Shown: positions 11,290 through 53,664 of the stretch, piece by piece
Layout of the letters: each line of letters starts with the position of its first letter
How positions within the stretch are numbered: the first letter of the stretch is position 1
Origin: Macrostomum hystrix
Lineage: Eukaryota; Animalia; Platyhelminthes
Assembly (NCBI GenBank): GCA_950097015.1
Contig: CATNEN010000038.1
Coordinates: 8,556,001-8,620,000 of the forward strand
Direction of reading: 5' to 3'
Length of the DNA stretch: 64,000 nt
Position numbers and translations under genes: made by a program
Notes under the pieces: model-generated
Database searches by the model: none
The model's input: only the letters and a program-made list of their open reading frames with translations
What the model was told of the DNA's origin: nothing

Positions 11290-11435
11290 GAAATACACTA
11301 GCTCTTATGGGAAAAATCGGACCTTCGGCCAGAAACGTTGAATATCTCGACGGTATGAAGAGCTGGCGACTTGTTTCTTGTTTCAGAAGATGCGCAACAA
11401 AAAGTTGGCCCGTGTTCTTGAGTTTCTCCCCCCTT
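11290..11435 (+). pseudogene. Possible decayed BEL/Pao LTR-retrotransposon C-terminal fragment
   Basis: Frameshifted peptides AGDLFLVSEDA and LARVLEFLP resemble the GDLVLV..D...W.L.RV.E..P motif that follows the BEL/Pao integrase. Confidence 0.3.
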
Positions 11436-11901
11436 GGTAGTTCTACTGTTAATAACCTTTGTGATTAAGTGATTAAATATTAACTAAAGGCTGCTTTGAT
11501 TATTCGTGTCTATGGCTTTATACGGGGCCGTAGTCCAATGCACTTAAACATGCGCTAAGTTTTCCAACTTAACTCTTCGTTTTCCATTCCTTGTTGCGTT
11601 CAGTCGGAATCCAGGCACTGATGACAGGATGTTCACCAAATATATTTTTGAGAAATATTAGTTTTTATGATTTGTGGCGCTTGCCCCCAGACTCTTAGAA
11701 AACAGTTAAAAAACAGAGATTCTTTTTAAATTAACAGAGATTCTGTTCAGTGAAATTTCCGCACTGTCTCACAGACAGCCAGACTACTAAAAGTAGAATT
11801 CTCAGCATTTAAAATCTATCTTGCCATGAACATTGTCTGAGCGTAAAAAGTGCTTAGCCAATCAACGGTCGAATTCGTCACAAAAGCCAGTCTCACTGGT
11901 C

Positions 11902-11909
11902 TTATAAAT
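11902..11909 (+). promoter_or_regulatory. Candidate TATA box (TATAAATA)
   Basis: Canonical TATAWAWA about 50 nt upstream of the ATG at 11954. Confidence 0.35.
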
Positions 11910-11953
11910 ATAGGCCACTATTGCTTTGGAATGCCCTACGGCTAAATTTTTAA

Positions 11954-12331
11954 ATGACGAAACCAAGACGCAATAATCTTTATACTCGTAATTTAAGGAG
12001 TCGGAACAGGAAACGAGATCAGGAGATCGAAAAAGATCAAAAGAAGATTCGTCGTAAGACCAAAATGACACCGACTAGAGAAGTAAAGTCCAGAAACAAG
12101 AGAAGTAAGAACGCGCCGCAGCCAAGGAATCGTTGGTGCAAAATCAAGGACATTGTCTGCAAAAGTAAGGAATTCCTCCAATCAAAAATAAGCAAAGGTA
12201 TCAAATACGTTTGCGAAAATCCTAAACAATGTTTAGAATCTTTGAATGAAATTATAGTTCAGTGTCATAAAGTAGCTCAGAATGGTAGAATACTATATGA
12301 GTTGCTTGTTGAGCCAGCCATGAAAAATTGA
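11954..12331 (+). CDS. Orphan intronless 125-aa protein with an Arg/Lys-rich N-terminal half
   Basis: Non-repetitive ATG-to-TGA ORF in AT-rich DNA with upstream TATA; no family recognised. Confidence 0.4.
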   Translation: MTKPRRNNLYTRNLRSRNRKRDQEIEKDQKKIRRKTKMTPTREVKSRNKRSKNAPQPRNRWCKIKDIVCKSKEFLQSKISKGIKYVCENPKQCLESLNEIIVQCHKVAQNGRILYELLVEPAMKN

Positions 12332-12494
12332 TAAATTGATAAAACTGATTTCAAAAAAAAAAATGTAAGAAAACGTCAAAAGAAATCAGTTTCAAAGAAA
12401 ACAAATAATAGCTGGGAGTAAAAACTAAGTCGTTACATTTGGCTTTAGAGACAAAATACAAATTGTATTCTAATACGAAAGTAACGACCTAGCT

Positions 12495-12631
12495 GCGGAC
12501 CAAGCAGACAGCAGCCTTCACGTGGCGGTCCGTGTCAGTACCTCGGGGCGATGTCGCACGCTGTAAAATCAGAAGCGATCCGAGCTGAATGCAACTGCTG
12601 CCACTCGCCTCGAGGGAAGCCAATCGCTGTC
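12495..12631 (+). ncRNA. HDV-like (CPEB3-type) self-cleaving ribozyme
   Basis: P1 GCGGACC 12495-12501 / GGTCCGT 12527-12533 (G1-U wobble); P2 GACAGCA 12507-12513 / T(C)GCTGTC 12624-12631; P3 GCC/GGC around L3 TTCACGT; J1/4 GTCAG; P4 CCTCGGGGCGA 12541-12551 / TCGCCTCGAGG 12605-12615; J4/2 GCCAA with putative catalytic C12620. Confidence 0.85.
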
Positions 12632-12669
12632 TAAATTGCAGTTTCGACAATCAGATGACCCTTTTAATT

Positions 12670-12919
12670 TTCCTGTCTTCTCTCTACTGCCTCCTGCTTC
12701 CTGTCTAATCTCTACTGTCTCCAGTCTTCTTGTCTCCTTGTCTCCTTTCTCCTCTCTCCTGTCTTACCTCTACGGCCTCCTGTCTCCTTGTCTCCTTTTC
12801 TCCTTTCTCGTCTCTCCTGTCAATCTCAAGGGTCTCCTGTCTCCTTGTCTTTAAGTCTCCTTCTCTCCTGTCTACTGTCTTCTGTCTTCTGCCCATTGTA
12901 TCCTGTATCCTGTCTCTTT

Positions 12920-12953
<34 letters not shown>

Positions 12954-12986
12954 TTTCTTCTCCTGTCTCCTGTCTCCTGTCTCTTT

Positions 12987-13020
<34 letters not shown>

Positions 13021-13053
13021 TTTCTTCTCCTGTCTCCTGTCTCCTGTCTCTTT

Positions 13054-13087
<34 letters not shown>

Positions 13088-13585
13088 TTTCTTCTCCTGT
13101 CTCCTGTCTCCTGTCTCTTTCTTCTCCTGTCTTCCGTCTCTTTCTTCTCTTGTCTCCTGTCTCTTTCTTCTCCCGTCTTCCGTCTCTTTCTTCTCTTGTC
13201 TCCTGTCTCTTTCTTCTCCTGTCTACTGGCTCCTTCTCCTGTCTCCTGTCTCCTGTCTCTTTCTTCTGGTAAGACATGTGTCTCCTGTCTCCTGTCTCCT
13301 GTCTCTTTCTTCTCCTGTCTCCCGTCTCTTTCTTCTCTTGTCTCCTGTCTCTTTCTTCTCCTGTCTACAGGCTCCTGTCTCCTGTCTACTGTCTTCTGTC
13401 TACTGTCTCCTGTCTCCTATCTACTGTCTCCTGTCTACTGTCTACTGTCTTCTGTCTTCTGTCTCCTGTCAACTGCCTACTGTCTAATATCTACTGGCTC
13501 CTGTCTTCTGTCCCCTGTGTACTATCTCCTTGTCTCCAAATTGTCTCCTGTCTCTTTGACTTCCTGACTATCGTCTCCTTGTCAG
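12670..13585. repeat. Pyrimidine-rich satellite block (TCCTGTC / TCTACTGTC based)
   Basis: Tandem 7-bp-based units. Confidence 0.93.
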
Positions 13586-14479: not shown

Positions 14480-15200
14480 CCTGTCTCATCTCTCCGCTGC
14501 CTCATCTCTCCGCTGCCTCATCTCTCCGCTGCCTCATCTCTCCGCTGCCTCATCTCTCCGCTGCCTCATCTCTCCGCTGCCTCATCTCTCCGCTGCCTCA
14601 TCTATCCTCTGTCTCATCTATCCTCTGTCTCATCTCTCCCCTGTCTGATGTCTCCCCCCGCCTCATCGCTCCTCTTTCTTATCTCTTCTCTGTCTCATCC
14701 CTCCCTGTCTCATCTCTCCCTGTCTCATCTCTCCGCTGCCTCATCTCTCCGCTGCCTCATCTCTCCGCTGCCTCATCTCTCCGCTGCCTCATCTCTCCGC
14801 TGCCTCATCTCTCCGCTGCCTCATCTCTCCGCTGCCTCATCTCTCCGCTGCCTCATCTATCCTCTGTCTCATCTCTCCCCTGTCTGATGTCTCCCCCGCC
14901 TCATCGCTCCTCTTTCTTATCTCTTCTCTGTCTCATCCCTCCCTGTCTCATCTCTCCCTGTCTCATCTCTCCCTGCCTCATCTCTCCCTGTCTCATCTCT
15001 CCGCTGCCTCATCTCTCCGCTGCCTCATCTCTCCCTGCCTCATCTCTCCCTGTCTCATCTCTCCCTGTCTCATCTCTCCCTGCCTCATCTCTCCCTGTCT
15101 CATCTCTCCGCTGCCTCATCTCTCCCTGCCTCATCTCTCCCTGTCTCATCTCTCCGTGTATCATCTCTTCCTGTCTCATCTCTACTGTCTCAGCTCTCCT
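14480..15200. repeat. 16-bp minisatellite (CTCATCTCTCCGCTGC) with 15-bp variants and a duplicated ~240-bp higher-order block
   Basis: Tandem periodicity; GATGTCTCCCCC...TCGCTCCTCTTTCTTATC occurs twice. Confidence 0.93.
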
Positions 15201-16477: not shown

Positions 16478-19400
16478 GACAGTAGACTGTAAGAGAGGAC
16501 CGTAGAGAGAAGACAGGAGAGAGGAGACAGAAGACAGTAGATAGAGGACAGTGGATAGAGGACAGTAGATAGGAGACAGTAGATAGAAGACAGGTGACAT
16601 GAGACAGCAGACACTAGAAATGATAAAGTAGAGAGGAGAGAGAAGACAGAAGGACAGAAGACAGAAGATAGTAGAAAGGAGACATTAGAAAGGAGATAGT
16701 AGAGATGAGACAGAAGACATGAGAGAGGAGACAGTAGATAGAAAACAATAGATAGAAAACAGTAGATATAAAACAGTAGATAGAAAACAGTAGATAGAAA
16801 ACAGTAGATAGAAAACAGTAGATAGGAGAAAGTAGATAGGAGACAGTAGATAGAAAACAGTAGATAGAAAACAGTAGATAGAAAACTGTAGATAGAAAAC
16901 AGCAGATAGGAGACAGTAGATAGAAAACAGTAGATAGAAAACAGTAGATAGGAGACAGTAGATAGAAAACAGTAGATAGAAAACAGTAGATAGAAAACTG
17001 TAGATAGAAAACAGTAGATAGAAAACAGTAGATAGGAGACAGTAGATAGAAAACAGTAGATAGGAGACAGTAGATAGAAAACAGTAGATAGAAAACAGTA
17101 GATAGGAGACAGTAGATAGAAAACAGTAGATAGGAGACAGTAGATAGAAAACAGTAGATAGAAAACAGTAGATAGAAGACAGTAGATAGAAGACAGTAGA
17201 TAGATAACAGTAGATGGAAGACAGTAGATAGAAAACAGTAGATAGAAAACAGTAGATAGGAGACAGTAGATAGAAAACAGTAGATAGGAGACAGTAGATA
17301 GAAAACAGTAGATAGAAAACAGTAGATAGGAGACAGTAGATAGAAAACAGTAGATAGGAGACAGTAGATAGAAAACAGTAGATAGAAAACAGTAGATAGA
17401 TAGAAAACATTAGATAGAAAACAGTAGATAGAAAACAGTAGATAGAAAACAGTAGATAGGAGACAGTAGATAGAAAGCAGTAGATAGAAAACAGTAGATA
17501 GAAAACAGTAGATAGAAAACAGTAGATAGAAAACAGTAGATAGAAAACAGTAGATAGAAAACATTAGATAGAAAACAGTAGATAGAAAACAGTAGATAGA
17601 AAACAGTAGATAGAAACCAGTAGATAGGAGACAGTAGATAGAAAGCAGTAGATAGAAAACAGTAGATAGAAAACAGTAGATAGGAGACAGTAGATAGAAA
17701 ACAGTAGATAGGAGACAGTAGATAGGAGACAGTAGATAGAAAACAGTAGATAGGAGACAGTAGATAGAAAGCAGTAGATAGAAAACAGTAGATAGAAAAC
17801 AGTAGATAGAAAACAGTAGATAGAAAACAGTAGATAGAAGACAGTAGATAGAAGACAGTAGATAGATAACAGTAGATGGAAGACAGTAGATAGAAAACAG
17901 TAGATAGAAAACAGTAGATAGAAAACAGTAGATAGAAAGAAAACATTAGATAGAAAACAGTAGATAGAAAACAGTAGATAGAAAACAGTAGATAGGAGAC
18001 AGTAGACAGAAAGCAGTAGATAGAAAACAGTAGATAGAAAACAGTAGATAGAAAACAGTAGATAGAAAACAGTAGATAGAAAACATTAGATAGAAAACAG
18101 TAGATAGAAAACAGTAGATAGAAAACAGTAGATAGAAACCAGTAGATAGGAGACAGTAGATAGAAAGCAGTAGATAGAAAACAGTAGATAGAAAACAGTA
18201 GATAGGAGACAGTAGATAGAAAACAGTAGATAGGAGACAGTAGATAGGAGACAGTAGATAGAAAACAGTAGATAGGAGACAGTAGATAGAAAGCAGTAGA
18301 TAGAAAACAGTAGATAGAAAACAGTAGATAGAAAACAGTAGATAGAAAACAGTAGATAGAAAACAGTAGATAGGAGACAGTAGATAGAAAACAGTAGATA
18401 GGAGACAGTAGATAGAAAACAGAAGATATAAAACAGTAGATAGGAGACAGTAGATAGGAGACAGTAGATAGAAAACAGTAGATAGAAAACAGTAGATAGG
18501 AGACAGTAGATAGAAAAAAGTAGATAGAAAACAGTAGATATAAAACAGTAGATAGAAAACAGTAGATAGAAAACAGTAGATAGAAAACAGTAGATAGGAG
18601 ACAGTAGATAGGAGACAGTAGATAGAAAACAGTAGATAGAAAACAGTAGATAGGAGACAGTAGATAGAAAACAGTAGATAGAAGACAGTAGATAGAAAAC
18701 TGTAGATAGAAAACAGTAGATAGAAAACAGCAGATAGGAGACAGTAGATAGAAAACAGTAGATAGAAAACAGTAGATAGGAGACAGTAGATAGAAAACAG
18801 TAGATAGAAAACAGTAGATAGAAAACAGTAGATAGAAAACAGTAGATAGAAAACAGTAGATAGAAAACTGTAGATAGAAAACAGTAGATAGAAAACAGTA
18901 GATAGGAGACAGTAGATAGAAAACAGTAGATAGGAGACAGTAGATAGAAAACAGTAGATAGAAAACAGTAGATAGGAGACAGTAGATAGAAAACAGTAGA
19001 TAGGAGACAGTAGATAGAAAACAGTAGATAGAAAACAGTAGATAGAAGACAGTAGATAGAAAACAGTAGATAGGAGACAGTAGATAGAAAACAGTAGATA
19101 GAAAACAGTAGATAGAAGACAGTAGATAGAAGACAGTAGATAGATAACAGTAGATGGAAGACAGTAGATAGAAAACAGTAGATAGAAAACAGTAGATAGG
19201 AGACAGTAGATAGAAAACAGTAGATAGGAGACAGTAGATAGAAAACAGTAGATAAAAAACAGTAGATAGGAGACAGTAGATAGAAAACAGTAGATAGGAG
19301 ACAGTAGATAGAAAACAGTAGATAGAAAACAGTAGATAGAAGACAGTAGATAGAAGACAGTAGATAGATAACAGTAGATGGAAGACAGTAAATAGAAAAC

Positions 19401-22400
19401 AGTAGATAGAAAACAGAAGATAGAAAACAGTAGATAGAAAACAGTAGATAGAAGACAGTAGATAGAAAACAGTAGATAGAAAACAGTGATGGAAGACAGT
19501 AGATAGAAAACAGTAGATAGGAGACAGTAGATAGAAAACAGTAGATAGAAAACATTAGATAGAAAACAGTAGATAGAAAACAGTAGATAGAAAACAGTAG
19601 ATAGGAGACAGTAGATAGAAAACAGTAGATAGAAAACAGTAGATAGATAGAAAACATTAGATAGAAAACAGTAGATAGAAAACAGTAGATAGAAAACAGT
19701 AGATAGGAGACAGTAGATAGAAAGCAGTAGATAGAAAACAGTAGATAGAAAACAGTAGATAGAAAACAGTAGATAGAAAACAGTAGATAGGAGACAGTAG
19801 ATAGAAAACAGTAGATAGGAGACAGTAGATAGAAAACAGTAGATAGAAAACAGTAGATAGATAGAAAACATTAGATAGAAAACAGTAGATAGAAAACAGT
19901 AGATAGAAAACAGTAGATAGGAGACAGTAGACAGAAAGCAGTAGATAGAAAACAGTAGATAGAAAACAGTAGATAGAAAACAGTAGATAGAAAACAGTAG
20001 ATAGAAAACAGTAGATAGAAAACATTAGATAGAAAACAGTAGATAGAAAACAGTAGATAGAAAACAGTAGATAGAAACCAGTAGATAGGAGACAGTAGAT
20101 AGAAAGCAGTAGATAGAAAACAGTAGATAGAAAACAGTAGATAGGAGACAGTAGATAGAAAACAGTAGATAGGAGACAGTAGATAGGAGACAGTAGATAG
20201 AAAACAGTAGATAGGAGACAGTAGATAGAAAGCAGTAGATAGAAAACAGTAGATAGAAAACAGTAGATAGAAAACAGTAGATAGAAAACAGTAGATAGAA
20301 AACAGTAGATAGGAGACAGTAGATAGAAAACAGTAGATAGGAGACAGTAGATAGAAAACAGAAGATATAAAACAGTAGATAGGAGACAGTAGATAGGAGA
20401 CAGTAGATAGAAAACAGTAGATAGAAAACAGTAGATAGGAGACAGTAGATAGAAAAAAGTAGATAGAAAACAGTAGATATAAAACAGTAGATAGAAAACA
20501 GTAGATAGAAAACAGTAGATAGAAAACAGTAGATAGGAGACAGTAGATAGGAGACAGTAGATAGAAAACAGTAGATAGAAAACAGTAGATAGGAGACAGT
20601 AGATAGAAAACAGTAGATAGAAGACAGTAGATAGAAAACTGTAGATAGAAAACAGTAGATAGAAAACAGCAGATAGGAGACAGTAGATAGAAAACAGTAG
20701 ATAGAAAACAGTAGATAGGAGACAGTAGATAGAAAACAGTAGATAGAAAACAGTAGATAGAAAACAGTAGATAGAAAACAGTAGATAGAAAACAGTAGAT
20801 AGAAAACTGTAGATAGAAAACAGTAGATAGAAAACAGTAGATAGGAGACAGTAGATAGAAAACAGTAGATAGGAGACAGTAGATAGAAAACAGTAGATAG
20901 AAAACAGTAGATAGGAGACAGTAGATAGAAAACAGTAGATAGGAGACAGTAGATAGAAAACAGTAGATAGAAAACAGTAGATAGAAGACAGTAGATAGAA
21001 AACAGTAGATAGGAGACAGTAGATAGAAAACAGTAGATAGAAAACAGTAGATAGAAGACAGTAGATAGAAGACAGTAGATAGATAACAGTAGATGGAAGA
21101 CAGTAGATAGAAAACAGTAGATAGAAAACAGTAGATAGGAGACAGTAGATAGAAAACAGTAGATAGGAGACAGTAGATAGAAAACAGTAGATAAAAAACA
21201 GTAGATAGGAGACAGTAGATAGAAAACAGTAGATAGGAGACAGTAGATAGAAAACAGTAGATAGAAAACAGTAGATAGAAGACAGTAGATAGAAGACAGT
21301 AGATAGATAACAGTAGATGGAAGACAGTAAATAGAAAACAGTAGATAGAAAACAGAAGATAGAAAACAGTAGATAGAAAACAGTAGATAGAAGACAGTAG
21401 ATAGAAAACAGTAGATAGAAAACAGTGATGGAAGACAGTAGATAGAAAACAGTAGATAGGAGACAGTAGATAGAAAACAGTAGATAGAAAACATTAGATA
21501 GAAAACAGTAGATAGAAAACAGTAGATAGAAAACAGTAGATAGGAGACAGTAGATAGAAAACAGTAGATAGAAAACAGTAGATAGATAGAAAACATTAGA
21601 TAGAAAACAGTAGATAGAAAACAGTAGATAGAAAACAGTAGATAGGAGACAGTAGATAGAAAGCAGTAGATAGAAAACAGTAGATAGAAAACAGTAGATA
21701 GAAAACAGTAGATAGAAAACAGTAGATAGGAGACAGTAGATAGAAAACAGTAGATAGGAGACAGTAGATAGAAAACAGTAGATAGAAAACAGTAGATAGA
21801 AAACAGTAGATAGGAGACAGTAGATAGAAAACAGTAGATAGAAAACAGTAGATAGGAGACAGTAGATAGAAAAAAGTAGATAGAAAACAGTAGATAGGAG
21901 ACAGTAGATAGAAAACAGTAGATAGAAAACAGTAGATAGAAAACAGTAGATAGAAAACAGTAGATAGGAGACAGTAGATAGAAAACAGTAGATAGAAAAC
22001 AGTAGATAGGAGACAGTAGATAGAAAACAGTAGATAGAAAACAGTAGATAGGAGACAGTAGATAGAAAACAGTAGATAGGAGACAGTAGATAGAAAACAG
22101 TAGATAGGAGACAGTAGATAGAAAACAGTAGATAGGAGACAGTAGATAGAAAACAGTAGATAGAAAACAGTAGATAGAAAACTGTAGATAGAAAACAGCA
22201 GATAGGAGACAGTAGATAGAAAACAGTAGATAGAAAACAGTAGATAGGAGACAGTAGATAGAAAACAGTAGATAGAAAACAGTAGATAGAAAACTGTAGA
22301 TAGAAAACAGTAGATAGAAAACAGTAGATAGGAGACAGTAGATAGAAAACAGTAGATAGGAGACAGTAGATAGAAAACAGTAGATAGGAGACAGTAGATA

Positions 22401-25400
22401 GAAAACAGTAGATAGAAAACAGTAGATAGAAGACAGTAGATAGAAGACAGTAGATAGATAACAGTAGATGGAAGACAGTAGATAGAAAACAGTAGATAGA
22501 AAACAGTAGATAGGAGACAGTAGATAGAAAACAGTAGATAGGAGACAGTAGATAGAAAACAGTAGATAAAAAACAGTAGATAGGAGACAGTAGATAGAAA
22601 ACAGTAGATAGGAGACAGTAGATAGAAAACAGTAGATAGAAAACAGTAGATAGAAGACAGTAGATAGAAGACAGTAGATAGATAACAGTAGATGGAAGAC
22701 AGTAGATAGAAAACAGTAGATAGAAAACAGAAGATAGAAAACAGTAGATAGAAAACAGTAGATAGAAGACAGTAGATAGAAAACAGTAGATAGAAAACAG
22801 TGATGGAAGACAGTAGATAGAAAACAGTAGATAGGAGACAGTAGATAGAAAACAGTAGATAGAAAACATTAGATAGAAAACAGTAGATAGAAAACAGTAG
22901 ATAGAAAACAGTAGATAGGAGACAGTAGATAGAAAACAGTAGATAGAAAACAGTAGATAGATAGAAAACATTAGATAGAAAACAGTAGATAGAAAACAGT
23001 AGATAGAAAACAGTAGATAGGAGACAGTAGATAGAAAGCAGTAGATAGAAAACAGTAGATAGAAAACAGTAGATAGGAGACAGTAGATAGAAAGCAGTAG
23101 ATAGAAAACAGTAGATAGAAAACAGTAGATAAAAAACAGTGATGGAAGACAGTAGATAGAAAACAGTAGATAGGAGACAGTAGATAGAAAACAGTAGATA
23201 GAAAACATTAGATAGAAAACAGTAGATAGAAAACAGTAGATAGAAAACAGTAGATAGAAAACAGTAGATAGAAAACAGTAGATAGGAGACAGTAGATAGA
23301 AAACAGTAGATAGAAAACAGTAGATAGATAGAAAACATTAGATAGAAAACAGTAGATAGAAAACAGTAGATAGAAAACAGTAGATAGGAGACAGTAGATA
23401 GAAAGCAGTAGATAGAAAACAGTAGATAGAAAACAGTAGATAGAAAACAGTAGATAGAAAACAGTAGATAGAAAACAGTAGATAGAAAACATTAGATAGA
23501 AAACAGTAGATAGAAAACAGTAGATAGAAAACAGTAGATAGAAAACAGTAGATAGGAGACAGTAGATAGAAAGCAGTAGATAGAAAACAGTAGATAGAAA
23601 ACAGTAGATAGAAAACAGTAGATAGAAAACAGTAGATAGGAGACAGTAGATAGAAAACAGTAGATAGGAGACAGTAGATAGGAGACAGTAGATAGAAAAC
23701 AGTAGATAGGAGACAGTAGATAGAAAGCAGTAGATAGAAAACAGTAGATAGAAAACAGTAGATAGAAAACAGTAGATAGAAAACAGTAGATAGAAAACAG
23801 TAGATAGGAGACAGTAGATAGAAAACAGTAGATAGGAGACAGTAGATAGAAAACAGAAGATATAAAACAGTAGATAGGAGATAGTAGATAGAAAACAGAA
23901 GATAGAAAACAGTAGATAGGAGACAGTAGATAGAAAACAGTAGATAGGAGACAGTAGATAGAAAACAGTAGATAGGAGACAGTAGATAGAAAACAGTAGA
24001 TAGAAAACAGTAGATAGGAGACAGTAGATAGAAAACAGTAGATAGAAAACAGTAGATAGAAAACAGTAGATAGAAAACAGTAGATAGAAAACAGTAGATA
24101 GAAAACAGTAGATAGAAAACAGTGATGGAAGACAGTAGATAGAAGACAGTAGATAGATAACAGTAGATGGAAGACAGTAGATAGAAAACAGTAGATAGAA
24201 AACAGTAGATAGGAGACAGTAGATAGAAAACAGTAGATAGGAGACAGTAGATAGAAAACAGTAGATAGAAAACAGTAGATAGGAGACAGTAGATAGAAAA
24301 CAGTAGATAGGAGACAGTAGATAGAAAACAGTAGATAGAAAACAGTAGATAGAAGACAGTAGATAGAAGACAGTAGATAGATAACAGTAGATGGAAGACA
24401 GTAGATAGAAAACAGTAGATAGAAAACAGAAGATAGAAAACAGTAGATAGAAAACAGTAGATAGGAGACAGTAGATAGAAAACAGAAGATATAAAACAGT
24501 AGATAGGAGATAGTAGATAGAAAACAGAAGATAGAAAACAGTAGATAGGAGACAGTAGATAGAAAACAGTAGATAGGAGACAGTAGATAGAAAACAGTAG
24601 ATAGGAGACAGTAGATAGAAAACAGTAGATAGAAAACAGTAGATAGGAGACAGTAGATAGAAAACTGTAGATAGAAAACAGTAGATAGAAAACAGTAGAT
24701 AGAAAACAGTAGATAGAAAACAGAAGATATAAAACAGTAGATAGAAAACAGTAGATAGAAAACAGTAGATAGAAAACAGTAGATAGAAAACAGTAGATAG
24801 AAAACAGTAGATAGAAAACAGTAGATAGAAAACAGTAGATAGAAAACAGTAGATAGGAGACAGTAGATAGAAAACAGTAGATAGAAAACAGTGATGGAAG
24901 ACAGTAGATAGAAGACAGTAGATAGATAACAGTAGATGGAAGACAGTAGATAGAAAACAGTAGATAGAAAACAGTAGATAGGAGACAGTAGATAGAAAAC
25001 AGTAGATAGGAGACAGTAGATAGAAAACAGTAGATAGAAAACAGTAGATAGGAGACAGTAGATAGAAAACAGTAGATAGGAGACAGTAGATAGAAAACAG
25101 TAGATAGAAAACAGTAGATAGAAGACAGTAGATAGAAGACAGTAGATAGATAACAGTAGATGGAAGACAGTAGATAGAAAACAGTAGATAGAAAACAGAA
25201 GATAGAAAACAGTAGATAGAAAACAGTAGATAGAAGACAGTAGATAGAAAACAGTAGATAGAAAACAGTGATGGAAGACAGTAGATAGGAGACAGTAGAT
25301 AGAAAACAGTAGATAGAAAACAGTAGATAGATAGAAAACATTAGATAGAAAACAGTAGATAGAAAACAGTAGATAGAAAACAGTAGATAGGAGACAGTAG

Positions 25401-27085
25401 ATAGAAAACAGTAGATAGAAAACAGTAGATAGGAGACAGTAGATAGAAAGCAGTAGATAGAAAACAGTAGATAGAAAACAGTAGATAGAAAACAGTAGAT
25501 AGAAAACAGTAGATAGAAAACAGTAGATAGAAAACAGTAGATAGAAAACAGTAGATAGGAGACAGTAGATAGAAAACAGTAGATAGGAGACAGTAGATAG
25601 GAGACAGTAGATAGAAAACAGTAGATAGGAGACAGTAGATAGAAAGCAGTAGATAGAAAACAGTAGATAGAAAACAGTAGATAGAAAACAGTAGATAGAA
25701 AACAGTAGATAGGAGACAGTAGATAGAAAACAGTAGATAGGAGACAGTAGATAGAAAACAGAAGATATAAAACAGTAGATAGGAGACAGTAGATAGAAAA
25801 CAGAAGATAGAAAACAGTAGATAGGAGACAGTAGATAGAAAACAGTAGATAGGAGACAGTAGATAGAAAACAGTAGATAGGAGACAGTAGATAGAAAACA
25901 GTAGATAGAAAACAGTAGATAGGAGACAGTAGATAGAAAACAGTAGATAGAAAACAGTAGATAGAAAACAGTAGATAGAAAACAGTAGATAGAAAACAGA
26001 AGATATAAAACAGTAGATAGAAAACAGTAGATAGAAAACAGTAGATAGAAAACAGTAGATTGAAAACAGTAGATAGAAAACAGTAGATAGAAAACAGTAG
26101 ATAGAAAACAGTAGATAGAAAACAGTAGATAGAAAACAGTAGATAGAAAACTGTAGATAGAAAACAGTAGATAGAAAACAGTAGATAGGAGACAGTAGAT
26201 AGAAAACAGTAGATGGAAGACAGTAGATAGAAAACAGTAGATAGAAAACAGTAGATAGGAGACAGTAGATAGAAAACAGTAGATAGGAGACAGTAGATAG
26301 AAAACAGTAGATAGAAAACAGTAGATAGGAGACAGTAGATAGAAAACAGTAGATAGGAGACAGTAGATAGAAAACAGTAGATAGAAAACAGTAGATAGAA
26401 GACAGTAGATAGAAGACAGTAGATAGATAACAGTAGATGGAAGACAGTAGATAGAAAACAGTAGATAGAAAACAGTAGATAGGAGACAGTAGATAGAAAA
26501 CAGTAGATAGGAGACAGTAGATAGAAAACAGTAGATAGAAAACAGTAGATAGGAGACAGTAGATAGAAAACAGTAGATAGGAGACAGTAGATAGAAAACA
26601 GTAGATAGAAAACAGTAGATAGAAGACAGTAGATAGAAGACAGTAGATAGATAACAGTAGATGGAAGACAGTAGATAGAAAACAGTAGATAGAAAACAGT
26701 GATGGAAGACAGTAGATAGAAAACAGTAGATAGGAGACAGTAGATAGAAAACAGTAGATAGGAGACAGTAGATAGAAAACAGTAGATAGAAAACAGTAGA
26801 TAGGAGACAGTAGATAGAAAACAGTAGATAGAAAACAGAAGATATAAAACAGTAGATAGAAAACAGTAGATAGAAAACAGTAGATAGAAAACAGTAGATA
26901 GAAAACAGTAGATAGAAAACAGTAGATAGAAAACAGTAGATAGAAAACAGTAGATAGGAGACAGTAGATATAAAACAGTAGATAGAAAACAGTGATGGAA
27001 GACAGTAGATAGAAGACAGTAGAGAGGAGACAGGAGACATGAGACAGGGGAGAGGAGACAGTAGAGTTGGCTGTCATAGTAGACA
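16478..27085. repeat. ~10.5-kb satellite with a 14-bp unit (AGTAGATAGAAAAC / AGTAGATAGGAGAC) and higher-order duplications
   Basis: Continuous 14-bp periodicity; all long FSIYCFLSTV ORFs derive from it. Confidence 0.98.
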
Positions 27086-40224: not shown

Positions 40225-42354
40225 TCAAAAGCGCGAGGTGTCCCTGCCAAACAACAGAGCTTTAGTCCAGTCTACGGGTACCTGTAGTCGTAGCCGCCAG
40301 CTGCCCAGCCTGGTGAGGTAGGCAGATCTCCACAGCAGCCAGGAGGTGAAGCCGTGCAGCTTGACATCGGGCATGTCTGTCAGCGCCTTGTAATCGCCGA
40401 TGTACGCCAGCATTCCACGGCCGGCAAATCTGAAGGGCTCGTCCTCCTGCAGCGGGCTCCGGCCGCGGTCCCGGCCGTCCACACCCCGGTTGAGCCGGCT
40501 GGCCAGGTAGCGGCCCTGTCGCTCAGCCACCTGGGCGGTGCAGGGCAGCGGGCTATCAACGATGGAGGCGCAGTCACCGATGGCGAAGGCCCGGCCGCTA
40601 CTGTCGGCCAGGACGCGAAGCTGCGGATCCGTCAGTAGCTGGCCGCTGCGACTCTTCGGCGCGTCCTGCATGTCGCGAATTAAAGGCCGCGGCGCCAGGC
40701 CGGTGCTCCACACGATAAGGCCGGCTGGAAGGCGGCTGCCGTCTCTGCGGGGCACAGCGCTTCAGGCTTTGCACTTCAAAGGAACCTCGATCAATGAATG
40801 CTGAACTTCAGGATTCATCAAACCATTTAACTTTAACCAAAAATTTCAGGGACAACTTAGATACAAAAATCAAAAGTAGCCTACAAACCCCACTTTTAGA
40901 AAGCTTCAAAAACCAAAAAAACTTCGGGGATCTCCAAAACCTAAAAACTTCAGGGAGCTTCAAAAACTAAAAACTTCAGGGGCTCCTAAATCTAAAAACT
41001 TCAGGGGCTCCTAAATCTAAAAACTTCAGGGGCTCCTAAATCTAAAAACTTCATGGGCTCAAAAATCTAAAAACTTCATGGGCTCCAAAACCTAAAAACT
41101 TCATGGGCTCCAAAATCTAAAAACTTTAGGGGCTCCAAAACCTAAAAACTTCATGGGCTCCAAAATCTAAAAACGTCAGGGGCTCCAAAATCTAAAAACT
41201 TCAGGAACTTACTTAAGCGTCACTCCGTGTGCATCAACCGAAGCCACTGTGCCGCGTTTTAAATTGAAATTTGATCTAGCCCGAATCTTTCTCTCGGCGT
41301 ACATTCTGAGAGAGGCGTCGAACGATGCCAGTATCTGGTCGGACTCCACCAGGGTCACGCGCACATCGGCGGCCCGGTGCCTGTACAGGCGAGTCAGATC
41401 CGAGCGGGCAAAGTCGTACAGCTCTGAGCCGAATTCAACGCCAGTCGGGCCGCCGCCAACAATGACCGTGTGCAGCACGCGAGCCCGCTCCTCGGGCCCA
41501 ACCCAGGCCTGCTGAGCCAGCTCAGTGTTCTCAATCAGGCGCTCACGGATGCGCCTGGCGTCCGTCACCTCCTGTATGACGGCGGGCGGATCGGAATTCA
41601 GTCTCAACGTTATGTTTGAACACTGGCATACCTTTCATACTCTAGTGATCGAGTTGTTCATGTCACCCTTACATAATATAATAATATTCGCAGGAGGGCT
41701 GTACGCACTGGCACATAATTTTGTGACACGCAGCCAGCAATTCTGCCTATTCTGGATGAATGTGGCCTCACTGCGGAATCGAGCTCAGACAACTCAGTCA
41801 CTCACATTAGGAACTGGCCATTCATATCATGTCAATAAACCGATTGATGGAAAGGAAGTTTCCGCATTCCCCAGTGCTCACAAAGCTCTCACCTTAAGAA
41901 ACAGAGCGTGCTCATTAACACCCGGCACTCCAAAGGTGTTAGTAAGCGCTCCAACCCCAATGACCAGCCGGTCGTAGCCAATCTGGTAAGTGGCCCGGCT
42001 GCCCAGGCACGATCTACAGGTGATCTCTCCAAGGCTGAAGTCAACCTCGGTAGCCTCTGCCAGGTGAAAGTGTTCAGATTGTCTGAAACCGCACTCACGC
42101 ACGGGCTCAATAATGGAGCGAAATTCCAGAGTGCCGACAGTGGTGGAGCATAACAGCGGCGTGAAAAGAAAATGATTGCGCGGCGAAACAACAATCACAT
42201 CGAATTTGGATTTGTCAATATTGCGAAGCACCGAGTAACTGCCCCAGCCCGTGCCAAGAATCACTAGGCGCTTCCTGCTTCCATTGAAGTCTGAACGACA
42301 ACGCCGAAAGCCTTTGAAGGCTTTGCCAACAACTGGCCGAAGGACAGACGACAG
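40225..42354 (-). CDS. Type II (alternative, non-proton-pumping) NADH:quinone oxidoreductase, NDH-2; exons 42354-41893, 41571-41213, 40744-40225; start-codon exon not located
   Basis: RLVILGTGWGS, SPRNHFLFTPLL, GTLEFRSIIEP, YDRLVIGVG, VIVGGGPTGVEFGSE, VWSTG, AIGDC, TAQVAERQG, MLAYIG, WRSAYLT, FGRD; GT-AG junctions in phase. Confidence 0.93.
40880..41205. repeat. 25-bp intronic minisatellite (TCTAAAAACTTCAGGGGCTCCTAAA)
   Basis: Tandem periodicity inside an NDH-2 intron. Confidence 0.92.
41675..41790 (-). mobile_element. Short, internally deleted SINE family A remnant in an NDH-2 intron
   Basis: GCAGGAGGGCTG...GCAATTCTGCC...GAATGTGGCCTCACTGCGGAATCGAGCTCAG matches family A. Confidence 0.7.
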
Positions 42355-42451
42355 CTGCAAGAAAAAAAAATTGTCAATGTCAATGTTAGTGTAATTGCAC
42401 ATTGACAACATGGTAAGGGTCTGTTCAGTGTACGAGCGTAATTACTTGTTC

Positions 42452-51643: not shown

Positions 51644-53664
51644 TTCTCCCTGCGTCACCTCGCGGCTGCCGGGACCCGCCTGGGACCCAGCCGGCACAGT
51701 TGCCTGTTCACCGCGGCCAGACAGCAGCCTGGCCCTGCCGCCGTGTTGCGCCATCGGTTGCGCAATCAGCTGACCTCAGGCTTGGGCCAGGGGCGCGGAT
51801 GCTCCACCGGGCAGGCTGGCGCCGCCACCTGGCACCCGATGGTGGCTCACCTCACTGCCAATCAGCGGCGCGCTGTCGGCGTCTGGCTGGCCACCTGCGC
51901 CGGCATGACGGCTGGCGCGGTGGTGCTCGGCGGACTCACCCGGCTGACCCGTTCTGGCCTAAGCATGACCAACTGGTCGCTCTTCAAGGTCGTTTGAGTT
52001 TAAACTCCCTTCCCTCAGTGCTTCCATTGCGCCCACCCTCTCCGCCAATGTACACTGGCCCCCTTACCCCCACCCTCCTCCGCCAATGTACACTGGCCCC
52101 CTTCAAACCCCCACCCTCCTCCGCCAATGTACACTGGCCCCTTCAAACCCCCACCCTCCCCGAAAATGTACACTGGCTCCTGCTAATCTATAAGCGTTAT
52201 GTCCGCTTCCAGGAGCTGCCGCCCACATCCCAGGCCGACTGGGAACGGGAATTTCAGCGCTACCAGGCCTACCCAGAGTACGAGTACATTGTCCGCGAGC
52301 GGGGCAGCATGACCCTGGCTGACTTCAAGGCAATCTACTGGCTGGAGTTCCTGCACCGCAGCTGGGGCCGCGCCATTGGGGCCGCTTTCGTCCTGCCGGC
52401 TGCCTATTTTTGGATGCGTGGCCGCTTCCAGGTGAGCCGAGGCGAAAGACATCAGAGCCGCTCCATAGCTGCCCAGCTTTTGAAGTGCAGGTGTTTCAAA
52501 AGACACCTGGAGACAGCATCCGCAGCCTTCAAATGTCGCCATCCGTAATTTAAACGGACACCATCGCCCCATCTCGATCCCGGCCCATCCACCCCCACTC
52601 AAATGACACCATCCGCCATCACTCAAATGACACCATCCGCCATCACTCAAATGACACCATCCGCCATCACTCAAATGACACCATCCGCCATCACTCAAAT
52701 GACACCATCCGCCATCACTCAAACGACACCATCCACCCCACTCAAATGACACCATCCGCCATCACTCAAATGACACCATCCGCCATCACTCAAACGACAC
52801 CATCCACCCCACTCAAATGACACCATCCGCCATCACTCAAATCACACCATCCGCCATCACTCAAATGACACCATCCACCCCACTCAAATGACACCATCCG
52901 CCATCACTCAAATCACACAACCCCCACCTCCACCGCAGCCTGGCATGCGCAAGCGAGTCCTTGTCTACGGCGGTCTGATTCTCGGCCAGGGCCTGCTGGG
53001 CTGGTACATGGTGCGCAGCGGACTGAGCAAGGCCACGCTGACCCAGGATGTGCCCAGAGTGAGCCAGTACCGACTGTCCGCCCACCTGGGATCGGCCCTG
53101 GTACTTTTCTCCCTGTTCACCTGGTCAGCCCTGACCCACCTGCTGCCCGTGTCGCAATTCGGCGCAGCAATCGGCATGCGGGGTCGACTGGCAGGCGCCG
53201 CCCACCTGCTCACCTCCTTGACATTCGCCACCGCAGTCTCCGGCGCCTTCGTAGCTGGCATTGACGCCGGCCTTGTGTACAACAGCTGGCCAAAGATGGC
53301 CGACCGGTGGGTGCCCAGCGACTACTGGGCCTTGCAGCCCGCCTGGCGCAACCTGTTTGAGAATCCGAGCGCTACCCAGTTCAACCACCGGCTCCTCGGC
53401 CACACCACCGCCTGCTCCGCGGCAGCCGTCTGGCTTTGGGTGGCCACCTCGGCCGGCGTCGGCAAATCCTCGGCCCTACCGGCGCGCACCAAACTGGCGC
53501 TTAACTGCCTACTGGCAGTTGTGTGTACTCAGGCCAGTTTGGGCATCGCCACCCTGCTCACCTACGTGCCGGTAACGCTGGCCGCCTGCCACCAGGCTGG
53601 CAGCGTGGCCCTGCTGGGCACCGCCACCTGGCTGATGCACGAGCTGCGCCGCCTGCCCAAATAG
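51644..53664 (+). CDS. COX15: Heme A synthase COX15; exons 51644-51988, 52213-52431, 52939-53664; start-codon exon not located
   Basis: [101 protein letters not shown]. Confidence 0.96.
52030..52180. repeat. 36-39-bp intronic repeat (CCACCCTCCTCCGCCAATGTACACTGGCCCC)
   Basis: 4 copies; shares CCAATGTACA with 50890-51170. Confidence 0.85.
52555..52920. repeat. 24-bp intronic minisatellite (ACTCAAATGACACCATCCGCCATC)
   Basis: Tandem periodicity. Confidence 0.93.

What the first reader, a model, noticed from the sequence alone, without database searches (positions are those of the whole stretch)
12495..12631. Complete HDV/CPEB3-type self-cleaving ribozyme with a long P4 insertion
Seen in sequence: every element of the HDV double pseudoknot is present in the right order on the + strand. 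These are a 7-bp P1 (GCGGACC/GGUCCGU) with a G-U pair at the cleavage site, P2 GACAGC/GCUGUC, a 3-bp P3 (GCC/GGC) closing L3 UUCACGU, GUCAG right after P1, an 11-bp P4 with a ~53-nt insert, and J4/2 GCCAA. Established knowledge: L3 UUCACGU followed after P1 by GUCAG is the arrangement of the mammalian CPEB3 ribozyme (single-pair P1.1), and HDV-like ribozymes often mark 5' ends of R2/RTE/L1Tc-type retroelements. Inference: cleavage occurs between T12494 and G12495, with C12620 catalytic. No reverse-transcriptase ORF follows, so the context is not the usual one.
Basis: partly seen in the sequence, partly recalled or inferred. Interest (0 to 1): 0.88.

Follow-up and report, generated by a model that had tools for sequence, protein, structure and literature searches.

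The report
Loop-E variant HDV-type self-cleaving ribozyme
This 137-base stretch very probably is a self-cutting RNA of the hepatitis-delta type, of a variant already shown to cut itself in fungi; here it sits in an animal genome, away from any jumping gene, and its role is unknown.

Summary

Four relatives in the same genome keep P1, P2 and P4 through changes on both sides, while the catalytic core stays fixed. A scan of public metagenomes found 73 more members. A model built from those alone finds the window copy at 59.5 bits, the only hit in the window.

The element is best filed under a described class: the "variant HDV ribozymes" with a loop-E (AGUA/GAA) motif at the base of P4 and one extra base between P2 and P3. 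Li and Breaker (2017) showed that fungal examples cleave in vitro. It is not a member of the mammalian CPEB3 family: 30.3 bits against a cut-off of 35.

P4 is long but within the class's variable range. No reverse transcriptase follows and the surrounding DNA is single-copy. Upstream lie a TATA box, an orphan 125-aa ORF and a very stable 68-nt hairpin that ends 2 nt before the cut site.

In the same genome a loop-E-less relative heads a LINE that carries a 2A peptide. Other agents of this scan had already reported LINE-head HDV-like ribozymes elsewhere in this genome.

Expression and cleavage could not be tested. Verdict: a new member of a known kind.

The parts
12495..12631 (+). Whole ribozyme, 137 nt. 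The predicted cut lies between U12494 and G12495.
   Evidence: Sequence; models R1, R2 and R3; Rfam CPEB3 model 30.3 bits.
12495..12501 (+). P1 5' strand, GCGGACC. It pairs with 12527-12533, GGUCCGU; the first pair is G.U.
   Evidence: In 4 genome copies, 5 of 7 pairs changed on both sides and all cells are paired. In 66 distinct metagenome rows, all 7 pairs covary.
12507..12512 (+). P2 5' strand, GACAGC. It forms a pseudoknot with 12626-12631, GCUGUC.
   Evidence: In 4 genome copies, 3 of 6 pairs changed on both sides and all cells are paired. 41 of 55 metagenome members have a P2 of 5 bp or more at this place, with 43 different sequences.
12513..12513 (+). Single unpaired base between P2 and P3, a hallmark of the variant class.
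   Evidence: class definition in PMC5640933.
12514..12526 (+). P3 (GCC/GGC) closing L3, UUCACGU (12517-12523). C12519 is placed to pair with G12534 as P1.1.
   Evidence: L3 is identical in all 5 genome copies.
12534..12540 (+). J1/4 (G12534, U12535), the first P4 base C12536 (pairs with G12619), and the 5' strand of the loop-E motif, AGUA 12537-12540.
   Evidence: GUCAGUA is conserved in the copies on contigs 38, 1 and 3. AGUA/GAA is the canonical sarcin-ricin motif sequence (PMC1865062).
12541..12615 (+). P4: an 11-bp helix (12541-12551 with 12605-12615) plus a 53-nt irregular apical hairpin.
   Evidence: Fold of 12539-12618: -32.8 kcal/mol, z -3.5. 4 compensatory changes against the contig 1 copy.
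12616..12625 (+). 3' strand of the loop-E motif (GAA 12616-12618), G12619 (pairs with C12536), and J4/2, CCAAUC, with the putative catalytic C12620.
   Evidence: GAAGCYAA is present in 40 of 55 metagenome members although the search pattern did not require it.
12626..12631 (+). P2 3' strand, GCUGUC.
12425..12492 (+). Stable 68-nt hairpin that ends 2 nt before the cut site. It may insulate the ribozyme fold or form the 3' end of the upstream product. Whether it belongs to the element is inferred.
   Evidence: Inverted repeat I1. Fold -22.4 kcal/mol, z -6.05. It stays separate from the ribozyme in the joint fold. Single copy in the genome.
11903..12331 (+). Possible upstream transcription unit: TATAAAT at 11903-11909 and an orphan basic ORF at 11954-12331 (125 aa). 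A run of 11 A follows at 12353-12363. The link to the ribozyme is conjecture.
   Evidence: No Pfam family, no homologue, no Atlas hit, single copy.

Best explanation
Window 12495-12631 (+) encodes a self-cleaving ribozyme of the HDV family, of the loop-E variant class.

When transcribed, the RNA should fold into the nested double pseudoknot: P1 stacks on P1.1 and P4, and P2 stacks on P3. The 2'-OH of U12494 then attacks its own phosphate. C12620 in J4/2 acts as general acid, and a divalent metal ion is held by L3. The products are an upstream RNA ending in a 2',3'-cyclic phosphate and a downstream RNA starting with a 5'-OH at G12495.

Shown here:
- the complete architecture;
- its maintenance by compensatory changes in paralogues and in 73 environmental relatives;
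- the absence of a retroelement body.

Taken from the literature:
- the chemistry of the reaction;
- the finding that fungal members of this variant class cleave at the base of P1.

Inferred: this copy is a stand-alone processing element. It would cut a short transcript that starts near the TATA box at 11903 and runs through the orphan ORF and the 68-nt hairpin. It is not the head of a mobile element. What the cut is for (3'-end formation, down-regulation, or release of the downstream RNA) is not known.
For: 1. All elements are in the canonical order and register, and the minimum-energy fold recovers P1, P3 and P4.
2. The window copy and the contig 1 copy have unrelated flanks. Between them, 7 pairs changed on both sides, none on one side only, and 96% of cells are paired, against 35-44% in slid controls.
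3. Across four genome copies, 14 of 27 pairs changed on both sides and 95.7% of cells are paired; 0 of 500 shuffles reach this. L3, GUCAGUA and GAAGCYAA do not vary.
4. A metagenome scan with an 18-base core pattern gave 104 stretches. 73 of the 80 fetched loci hold a full model match. In 66 distinct rows, 94.8% of cells are paired against 59.7% when shuffled, and 360 cells carry a change on both sides. There are 39 different P1 and 43 different P2 sequences.
5. Model R3, built only from those metagenome rows, hits the window at 12485-12641 with 59.5 bits, E 1.9e-15.
6. Li and Breaker 2017 (PMC5640933) define exactly this variant: an E-loop in P4 and an extra base between P2 and P3. They show cleavage at the base of P1 for two fungal examples. 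Their alignment holds rows with GUCAGUA...GAAGCUAAGA.
7. There is no RT or endonuclease ORF on the + strand downstream and no target-site duplication. Leader and ORF are single-copy.
Against: - No experimental or expression evidence.
- No Rfam family reaches its gathering score.
- The whole-ribozyme fold energy is only modestly better than shuffles (z -1.34), which is expected when a pseudoknot is ignored.
- The cleavage-site pair is G.U, whereas the fungal class typically has C-G.
- The long, irregular P4 could slow folding.
- The upstream ORF is an orphan and may not be a gene, so the proposed transcription unit is weak.
Confidence: 0.85

Rival explanations
1. It is the head, or a remnant of the head, of a retroelement. 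This could be a LINE whose body was lost, or a short non-autonomous element that LINEs mobilise. On this reading the ribozyme only trims the element's RNA to its 5' end.
For: - A related ribozyme with the same L3, the same CCAA and the extra base, but no loop E, heads an APE-RT-RNase H LINE that carries a 2A peptide.
- At least 7 LINE copies begin their homology at the ribozyme's first base.
- Other agents' notes report ribozyme-headed LINEs and a 256-bp mini-element in this genome.
- A simple repeat, (TCCTGTC)n, starts 40 nt after the ribozyme.
Against: - No RT or APE ORF downstream.
- No target-site duplication of 9 nt or more within 9 kb.
- The flanks of the window and contig 1 copies are unrelated, and leader and ORF are single-copy.
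- The LINE's own tail is (CA)n, not TCCTGTC.
- Retrotransposition truncates 5' ends, not 3' ends, so solo heads are not its normal product.
- Most metagenome members of the loop-E type also lack a downstream RT.
Confidence: 0.08
2. It is a structurally intact but silent relic: a ribozyme sequence kept by recent origin rather than by selection, never transcribed at this locus.
For: - The neighbourhood is repeat-rich: minisatellites, mariner/Tc1 remnants and a 10.5-kb satellite.
- The upstream ORF has no relatives.
- No RNA data were available.
Against: - The window and contig 1 copies have diverged to 78% column identity, yet every stem change in P1 and P2 is compensated and the core is untouched. 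Drift without selection would not give this.
- A highly stable hairpin is placed 2 nt before the cut site.
Confidence: 0.05
3. It is a fragment of an endogenised viroid-like or delta-like circular RNA: a basic ORF followed by an HDV-type ribozyme, as on the deltavirus antigenome or in ambiviruses.
For: - A basic ORF is followed by the ribozyme 164 nt later.
- The same ribozyme type follows an ambivirus-like RdRp ORF in 5-kb metagenome contigs.
- Ambivirus-like circular RNAs with 'CPEB3' ribozyme hits are on record (10.1101/2022.07.19.500677).
Against: - No rod-like self-complementarity: only 53-60% of bases are paired when 11400-12670 is folded as a circle, and there are no long-range inverted repeats.
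- No second ribozyme on the other strand.
- The ORF matches no family.
Confidence: 0.02

Closest known systems
Variant HDV self-cleaving ribozymes with an E-loop in P4 (Li and Breaker 2017, BMC Genomics 18:785, PMC5640933). E-loop-bearing HDV variants are also mentioned in PMC13635239.
   Same: - Nested double pseudoknot.
- Loop-E (AGUA/GAA) motif replacing the base of P4.
- One extra base between P2 and P3.
- GUCAGUA ... GAAGCYAA signature.
- Variable P4 tip.
- Varied, non-retroelement gene contexts.
   Different: - Reported there from 26 filamentous ascomycetes; this copy is in an animal genome.
- The cleavage-site pair here is G.U (G-C in a paralogue), not the C-G typical of fungi.
- P4 here is longer (75 nt) than in most members.
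Mammalian CPEB3 ribozyme (Rfam RF00622)
   Same: - Identical L3, UUCACGU.
- GU joiner followed by a P4 that opens with a C-G pair.
- C-N-A-A in J4/2.
- 5-nt J1/2.
- P2 contains GCAGC-like bases.
   Different: - Scores below the family's gathering score (30.3 and 34.3 against 35).
- CPEB3 has a short continuous 7-bp P4 without a loop E, and no extra base between P2 and P3.
- It is 68 nt long and lies in an intron of one conserved gene.
Retrotransposon 5'-end HDV-like ribozymes (R2, RTE, L1Tc/Pr77), including the ribozyme-plus-2A layout of L1Tc (PMC3185411, PMC3383444, PMC5814959)
   Same: - Same fold and chemistry.
- A close relative in this very genome heads an APE-RT-RNase H LINE with a 2A peptide.
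   Different: The window copy has no element body, no repeat family and no target-site duplication. It carries the loop-E motif, which the LINE-head copies lack.
HDV-type ('CPEB3'-scoring) ribozymes of ambiviruses and other viroid-like circular RNAs (Lee et al., 10.1101/2022.07.19.500677)
   Same: The same core signature was found 73-160 nt after an ambivirus-like RdRp ORF in 5-kb metagenome contigs (L151, L129, L119).
   Different: The window locus is chromosomal, is not rod-like, and has one ribozyme on one strand only.

Membership tests
[quoted passage not shown] | Nested double pseudoknot, with strands in the order P1-P2-P3-L3-P3'-P1'-P4-P4'-P2'. | tested here: met
[quoted passage not shown] | Cleavage site at the first base of a roughly 7-bp P1. 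| tested here: met
   The 7-bp P1 starts at G12495 with a G.U pair. In the LINE-head relatives, copy homology starts at the equivalent base.
[quoted passage not shown] | Catalytic cytosine in J4/2 followed by N-A-A, and an L3 able to form P1.1 with J1/4. | tested here: met
   C12620-C-A-A; C12519 of L3 can pair with G12534. These bases are invariant in the genome copies.
[quoted passage not shown] | Site-specific self-cleavage giving 2',3'-cyclic phosphate and 5'-OH ends. | not testable with these tools
   No RNA runs listed. Shown only for fungal class members in PMC5640933.
Loop-E variant HDV ribozymes (Li and Breaker 2017) | P4 partly replaced by an E-loop motif. | tested here: met
   AGUA 12537-12540 and GAA 12616-12618, between C12536-G12619 and the P4 helix. 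The motif sequence is confirmed in PMC1865062.
Loop-E variant HDV ribozymes (Li and Breaker 2017) | One extra nucleotide between P2 and P3. | tested here: met
   A12513.
Loop-E variant HDV ribozymes (Li and Breaker 2017) | C-G pair at the cleavage site (described as 'typical'). | tested here: not met
   G.U here. In the metagenome members the first pair is G-C in 28, G.U in 19 and C-G in 3. The paper calls the feature typical, not obligatory.
Loop-E variant HDV ribozymes (Li and Breaker 2017) | Matches a covariance model built from independent members. | tested here: met
   R3, built from 73 metagenome rows, gives 59.5 bits, E 1.9e-15. The authors' own model was not available. Their alignment rows share GUCAGUA...GAAGCUAAGA.
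Mammalian CPEB3 ribozyme (RF00622) | Score at or above Rfam's gathering cut-off of 35 bits. | tested here: not met
   30.3 bits for the window, 34.3 for the contig 1 copy, 12.5 for the contig 3 copy, and no hit for the LINE head.
Mammalian CPEB3 ribozyme (RF00622) | Location in an intron of a CPEB3 gene. | tested here: not met
   No CPEB/RRM family among the ORFs around the site. The region is repeat-rich and intergenic-looking.
Retrotransposon 5'-end HDV-like ribozymes | Endonuclease/reverse-transcriptase ORF downstream, and a repeat family whose copies start at the cut site. | tested here: not met
   No such ORF. Flanks are single-copy. No target-site duplication. The feature is met only by the contig 2 relative.

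The most novel reading that the evidence does not exclude
The ribozyme is the 3'-end-forming signal of a small RNA polymerase II gene. The layout would be: TATA box, 125-aa ORF, encoded A-run, 68-nt terminal hairpin, then self-cleavage 2 nt past the hairpin. That would be a poly(A)-independent way of making a stable mRNA or ncRNA 3' end in an animal. The copies on contigs 1 and 3, which also lie just after or at the end of ORFs, would work the same way.
Probability: 0.1. Interest if true: 0.75.

Novelty: new member of a known kind. Interest (0 to 1): 0.42.

Why it matters
It extends the loop-E variant of HDV ribozymes, described and bench-tested only in filamentous fungi, to an animal genome.

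In that genome the variant is kept at three unrelated, non-retroelement loci under clear structural constraint. A loop-E-less relative heads an active-looking LINE in the same genome.

The metagenome scan shows the same core in fungal-type loci, in one Helitron, in tandem 290-nt units and in ambivirus-like RNAs. The class is therefore far more widespread than the 230 fungal examples on record.

The biological role of the stand-alone copies is an open question in both fungi and animals. This locus, with its upstream hairpin and possible promoter, is a compact test case.

Tried and rejected
- Rfam at gathering thresholds over the whole window: nothing.
- Pattern TTCACGT-N10-GTCAG in the own genome: 30 hits against 28 in the control, so chance level. 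Only the window, contig 1 and contig 3 copies passed the helix checks.
- Patterns with GTCAGTA and GAAGCYAA found no further genome members.
- A degenerate head on contig 5 (L040/L045) has only the P3-L3 core and 4 bp of P1.
- Target-site duplications: none.
- Flank homology between copies: none beyond the ribozyme.
- Orphan ORF: no Pfam family, no homologue, no paralogue, no Atlas hit.
- The contig 3 ORF's weak ion-channel (Lig_chan) match of 20 bits was not confirmed by a genome-wide family search. It has no homologues in the length range searched, 0.55-1.75 times the query.
- Delta- or viroid-like origin: no rod-like fold.
- CPEB3 ancestry idea: weakened, because the paralogues and LINE heads do not score with the CPEB3 model.
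- RNA evidence: no run was listed.
- Weinberg et al. 2015 (PMC4509812) is not held in the library.
- Complex prediction, structure prediction and fold search were not needed.

Full report
**Observation.**
- P1 GCGGACC/GGUCCGU, with G12495.U12533 at the cleavage site
- a 5-nt J1/2
- P2 GACAGC/GCUGUC
- P3 GCC/GGC closing L3 UUCACGU
- GUCAG after P1
- an 11-bp P4 helix with 53 nt between its strands
- GCCAA before the 3' strand of P2

RNAfold recovers P1, P3 and P4 in the minimum-energy structure. P2 is a pseudoknot and cannot be predicted by that program. No Rfam family reaches its gathering score over the window. On the local stretch, the CPEB3 model aligns P1, P3, L3 and GUCAG at 30.3 bits (cut-off 35), E 1.8e-6. 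The long P4 throws off the alignment of the 3' half.

**Relatives in the same genome.**
The window is contig 38:8556001-8620000 of a 220-Mb, 42-contig assembly. DNA, pattern and covariance-model searches of that genome found four more copies:
- Contig 1:21386463-21386582 (-), 120 nt, with a long P4.
- Contig 3:1128919-1128988 (-) and contig 3:1137599-1137668 (-), 70 nt each, with a 3-bp P4.
- Contig 2:4795181-4795248 (-), 68 nt.

The flanks of the window and contig 1 copies share nothing beyond the ribozyme. Between these two copies, 7 pairs differ on both sides and none on one side only (1 in P1, 2 in P2, 4 in P4). 96% of cells are paired, against 35-44% when the partners are slid. With the two contig 3 copies added, 14 of 27 pairs have changes on both sides and 95.7% of cells pair; no shuffle out of 500 reaches this. 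L3, the GUCAGUA stretch and GAAGCYAA are invariant. This is the pattern expected of an RNA kept for its fold. The own-genome model searches scored only 150 of many first-look candidates, so five copies is a lower bound.

**Anatomy, refined.**
The copies on contigs 38, 1 and 3 share the layout GU-C-AGUA-[P4 helix]-GAA-G-CYAA. Here C12536 pairs with G12619. AGUA (12537-12540) faces GAA (12616-12618). C12620 follows, in the C-N-A-A context of the catalytic cytosine. AGUA/GAA is the canonical sarcin-ricin (loop-E) motif sequence (PMC1865062). A single unpaired base, A12513, separates P2 from P3. The P4 domains fold as long hairpins: z -3.5 for the window and -5.6 for contig 1.

**The known class it belongs to.**
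Li and Breaker (BMC Genomics 2017, PMC5640933) described 230 "variant HDV ribozymes" in 26 ascomycetes. They differ from the classical consensus by (i) a typical C-G pair at the cut site, (ii) an E-loop partly replacing P4, and (iii) an extra base between P2 and P3. The authors showed cleavage at the base of P1, with cyclic-phosphate and 5'-OH products, for Penicillium chrysogenum and Aspergillus niger examples. They noted "widely variable gene associations". Their alignment contains rows reading ...GUCAGUAG...GAAGCUAAGA.... A 2026 preprint reports confirming four A. nidulans variants. A 2026 structural paper mentions E-loop-bearing HDV variants among its candidate set (PMC13635239). The window copy meets features (ii) and (iii) but has G.U at the cut site.

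**Independent relatives.**
A scan of public metagenome contigs for CCTTCACGTGG-N8-GTCAGTA returned 104 stretches. In 73 of the 80 fetched loci, model R2 found a full-length match. Counts from my script:
- 55 non-duplicate rows carry the 3' motif.
- 43 of them have a perfect 7-bp P1, with 39 different sequences.
- 54 have a 3-bp P3.
- 41 have a P2 of 5 bp or more at the right place, with 43 different sequences.
- 40 have GAAGCYAA, which the search pattern did not require.

On the stored structure, 94.8% of cells pair, against 59.7% in shuffles and 39-52% when slid; 360 cells carry changes on both sides. A model built from these rows alone (R3) finds the window at 12485-12641 with 59.5 bits, E 1.9e-15, and nothing else in the 64 kb. 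The LINE-head copies score about 28 bits. P4 in these members ranges from 11 to 65 nt, so the 75-nt P4 here is long but not of a different kind.

**Context in the window.**
No endonuclease or reverse-transcriptase ORF lies downstream on the + strand. Forty bases after the ribozyme a (TCCTGTC)n array begins (12671-13537). Further satellites and mariner/Tc1 remnants surround the locus. No target-site duplication of 9 nt or more was found.

Upstream lie:
- TATAAAT at 11903-11909
- an ORF at 11954-12331 (125 aa, very basic), with no Pfam family, homologue, paralogue or Atlas hit
- a run of 11 A at 12353-12363
- a 68-nt hairpin at 12425-12492 that ends 2 nt before the cut site (-22.4 kcal/mol, z -6.05)

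In a joint fold the hairpin and the ribozyme stay separate. Leader and ORF are single-copy in the genome.

The contig 1 copy has a similar layout: TATAAAA, a 43-aa ORF, a stop 37 nt before the cut site, and AATAAA just after the ribozyme. The contig 3 copies lie within the last 29 codons of a 160-aa open frame that has a membrane-spanning segment. That frame sits in two tandem duplicates, 97-100% identical upstream.

**The LINE-head relative.**
The contig 2 copy has a continuous P4 (CACAGA/UCUGUG) and J4/2 CCAAAU. It is followed in frame by a 2A peptide (DVEPNPGP) and an APE-RT-RNase H ORF. At least seven copies of this LINE begin their homology at the ribozyme's first base. Other agents of this scan had already reported such ribozyme-plus-2A LINEs in this genome, which they call a flatworm. 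I did not verify the taxon. The genome does hold 116 ionotropic-receptor-type channel matches, Tc1/mariner remnants and LINEs, which fits an animal.

**Contexts of the environmental members.**
Downstream ORFs are ordinary eukaryotic genes: ankyrin, SAM, fungal transcription factor, HET and isocitrate dehydrogenase domains. None is a reverse transcriptase.
- Several members sit 73-170 nt after the stop of a long ORF.
- One of those ORFs is a 1981-aa Helitron Rep/helicase with a C-terminal endonuclease.
- Two ~5-kb contigs carry homologous ~740-aa ORFs, and a third carries a 758-aa ORF I did not compare. The Atlas features of one of them (L151) match ambivirus RdRps at 0.98.
- Ambivirus-like circular RNAs with "CPEB3"-scoring ribozymes are on record.
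- One contig holds tandem units of about 290 nt, each with a ribozyme.
- Many hits are orthologous loci of related species, with flanks 78-85% identical and ribozymes 80-94% identical.

**Explanation and rivals.**
The best reading (0.85) is an active or recently active self-cleaving ribozyme of the loop-E HDV variant class. It would act as a stand-alone RNA-processing element on a local transcript. Its purpose is unknown. The rivals:
- Retroelement head or remnant (0.08). Against it: unique flanks and no element body.
- Silent relic (0.05). Against it: the compensatory changes.
- Endogenised viroid- or delta-like fragment (0.02). Against it: no rod-like fold (only 53-60% of bases paired), no second ribozyme, and no protein similarity.

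Chance is excluded by the model scores and the covariation.

**Limits.**
- No RNA run was listed for this stretch. Expression and cleavage in vivo are untested.
- No collection of eukaryotic genomes could be searched.

**Verdict.**
A well-supported, complete HDV-family ribozyme. It is a new animal member of a variant class already described and bench-tested in fungi. It is not a CPEB3-family member and not a retrotransposon head. Interest is moderate.

Noticed in passing
window 12425-12492: A 68-nt imperfect hairpin (-22.4 kcal/mol, z -6.05) ends exactly 2 nt before the predicted ribozyme cut. The upstream product would therefore end in a hairpin with a 2-nt 3' overhang. It is single-copy in the genome.
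   Followed up: partly
window 11903-12363: TATAAAT, then an orphan basic ORF of 125 aa (11954-12331), then a run of 11 A. There is no family, homologue or paralogue. The copy on contig 1 has a similar TATA-short ORF-ribozyme layout.
   Followed up: partly
window 12671-13537, 14481-15183, 16525-27023: Three simple-repeat arrays: (TCCTGTC)n starting right after the ribozyme, a 16-mer array, and a 10.5-kb array of a 14-mer (AGATAGAAAACAGT). The last gives very long spurious ORFs on the minus strand.
   Followed up: no
L037/L051 (contig 2:4785200-4796762), minus strand: A LINE with a 68-nt HDV-like ribozyme at its exact 5' end. The frame stays open through the ribozyme. A 2A peptide (DVEPNPGP) lies about 50 codons downstream, followed by an APE-RT-RNase H ORF of 1234 aa and a (CA)n tail. 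At least 7 copies exist in the genome. The open frame also extends about 250 codons upstream into flanking DNA.
   Followed up: partly
L051:2530-2645 (-): A U5 spliceosomal RNA gene (72 bits, gathering score 40) lies about 700 nt upstream of that LINE copy.
   Followed up: no
L043:8899-9378 (-) and L047:7579-8058 (-), contig 3: Two tandem duplicates 8.7 kb apart. In each, the 70-nt ribozyme lies inside the last 29 codons of a 160-aa open frame that has a transmembrane segment. The 30 nt just upstream of the cut site hold a cluster of 11 differences, while the ribozyme is 70/70 identical.
   Followed up: partly
L045:4300-6545 (+), contig 5: A decayed LINE head. Only the P3-L3 core (GCCTTCACGTGGC) and 4 bp of P1 remain. 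A DVETNPGP 2A motif and APE and RT ORFs follow.
   Followed up: partly
L151, L129, L119 (metagenome contigs of 4.9-5.1 kb): The same ribozyme type lies 73-160 nt after the stop of a 734-758-aa ORF. For L151 the language-model features match ambivirus RdRps (0.98). These are probably ambivirus-like circular RNA genomes.
   Followed up: partly
L143:1766-7953 (+): The ribozyme lies 170 nt after a 1981-aa Helitron-type Rep/PIF1 helicase ORF with a C-terminal endonuclease domain. The contig ends inside the ribozyme.
   Followed up: no
L081:3800-4525; also L121, L094, L106, L102: L081 holds tandem units of about 290 nt, each with a ribozyme, some decayed. The other four are contigs of 1.0-1.4 kb with direct terminal repeats of 96-313 nt. 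These may be small circular RNAs or tandem arrays carrying this ribozyme.
   Followed up: no
window 41878-42411 (-), 51700-53664 (+), 59360-61252 (-): Ordinary host genes far from the ribozyme: a pyridine nucleotide-disulphide oxidoreductase fragment, COX15/CtaA in two exons, and an MFS sugar-type transporter.
   Followed up: no
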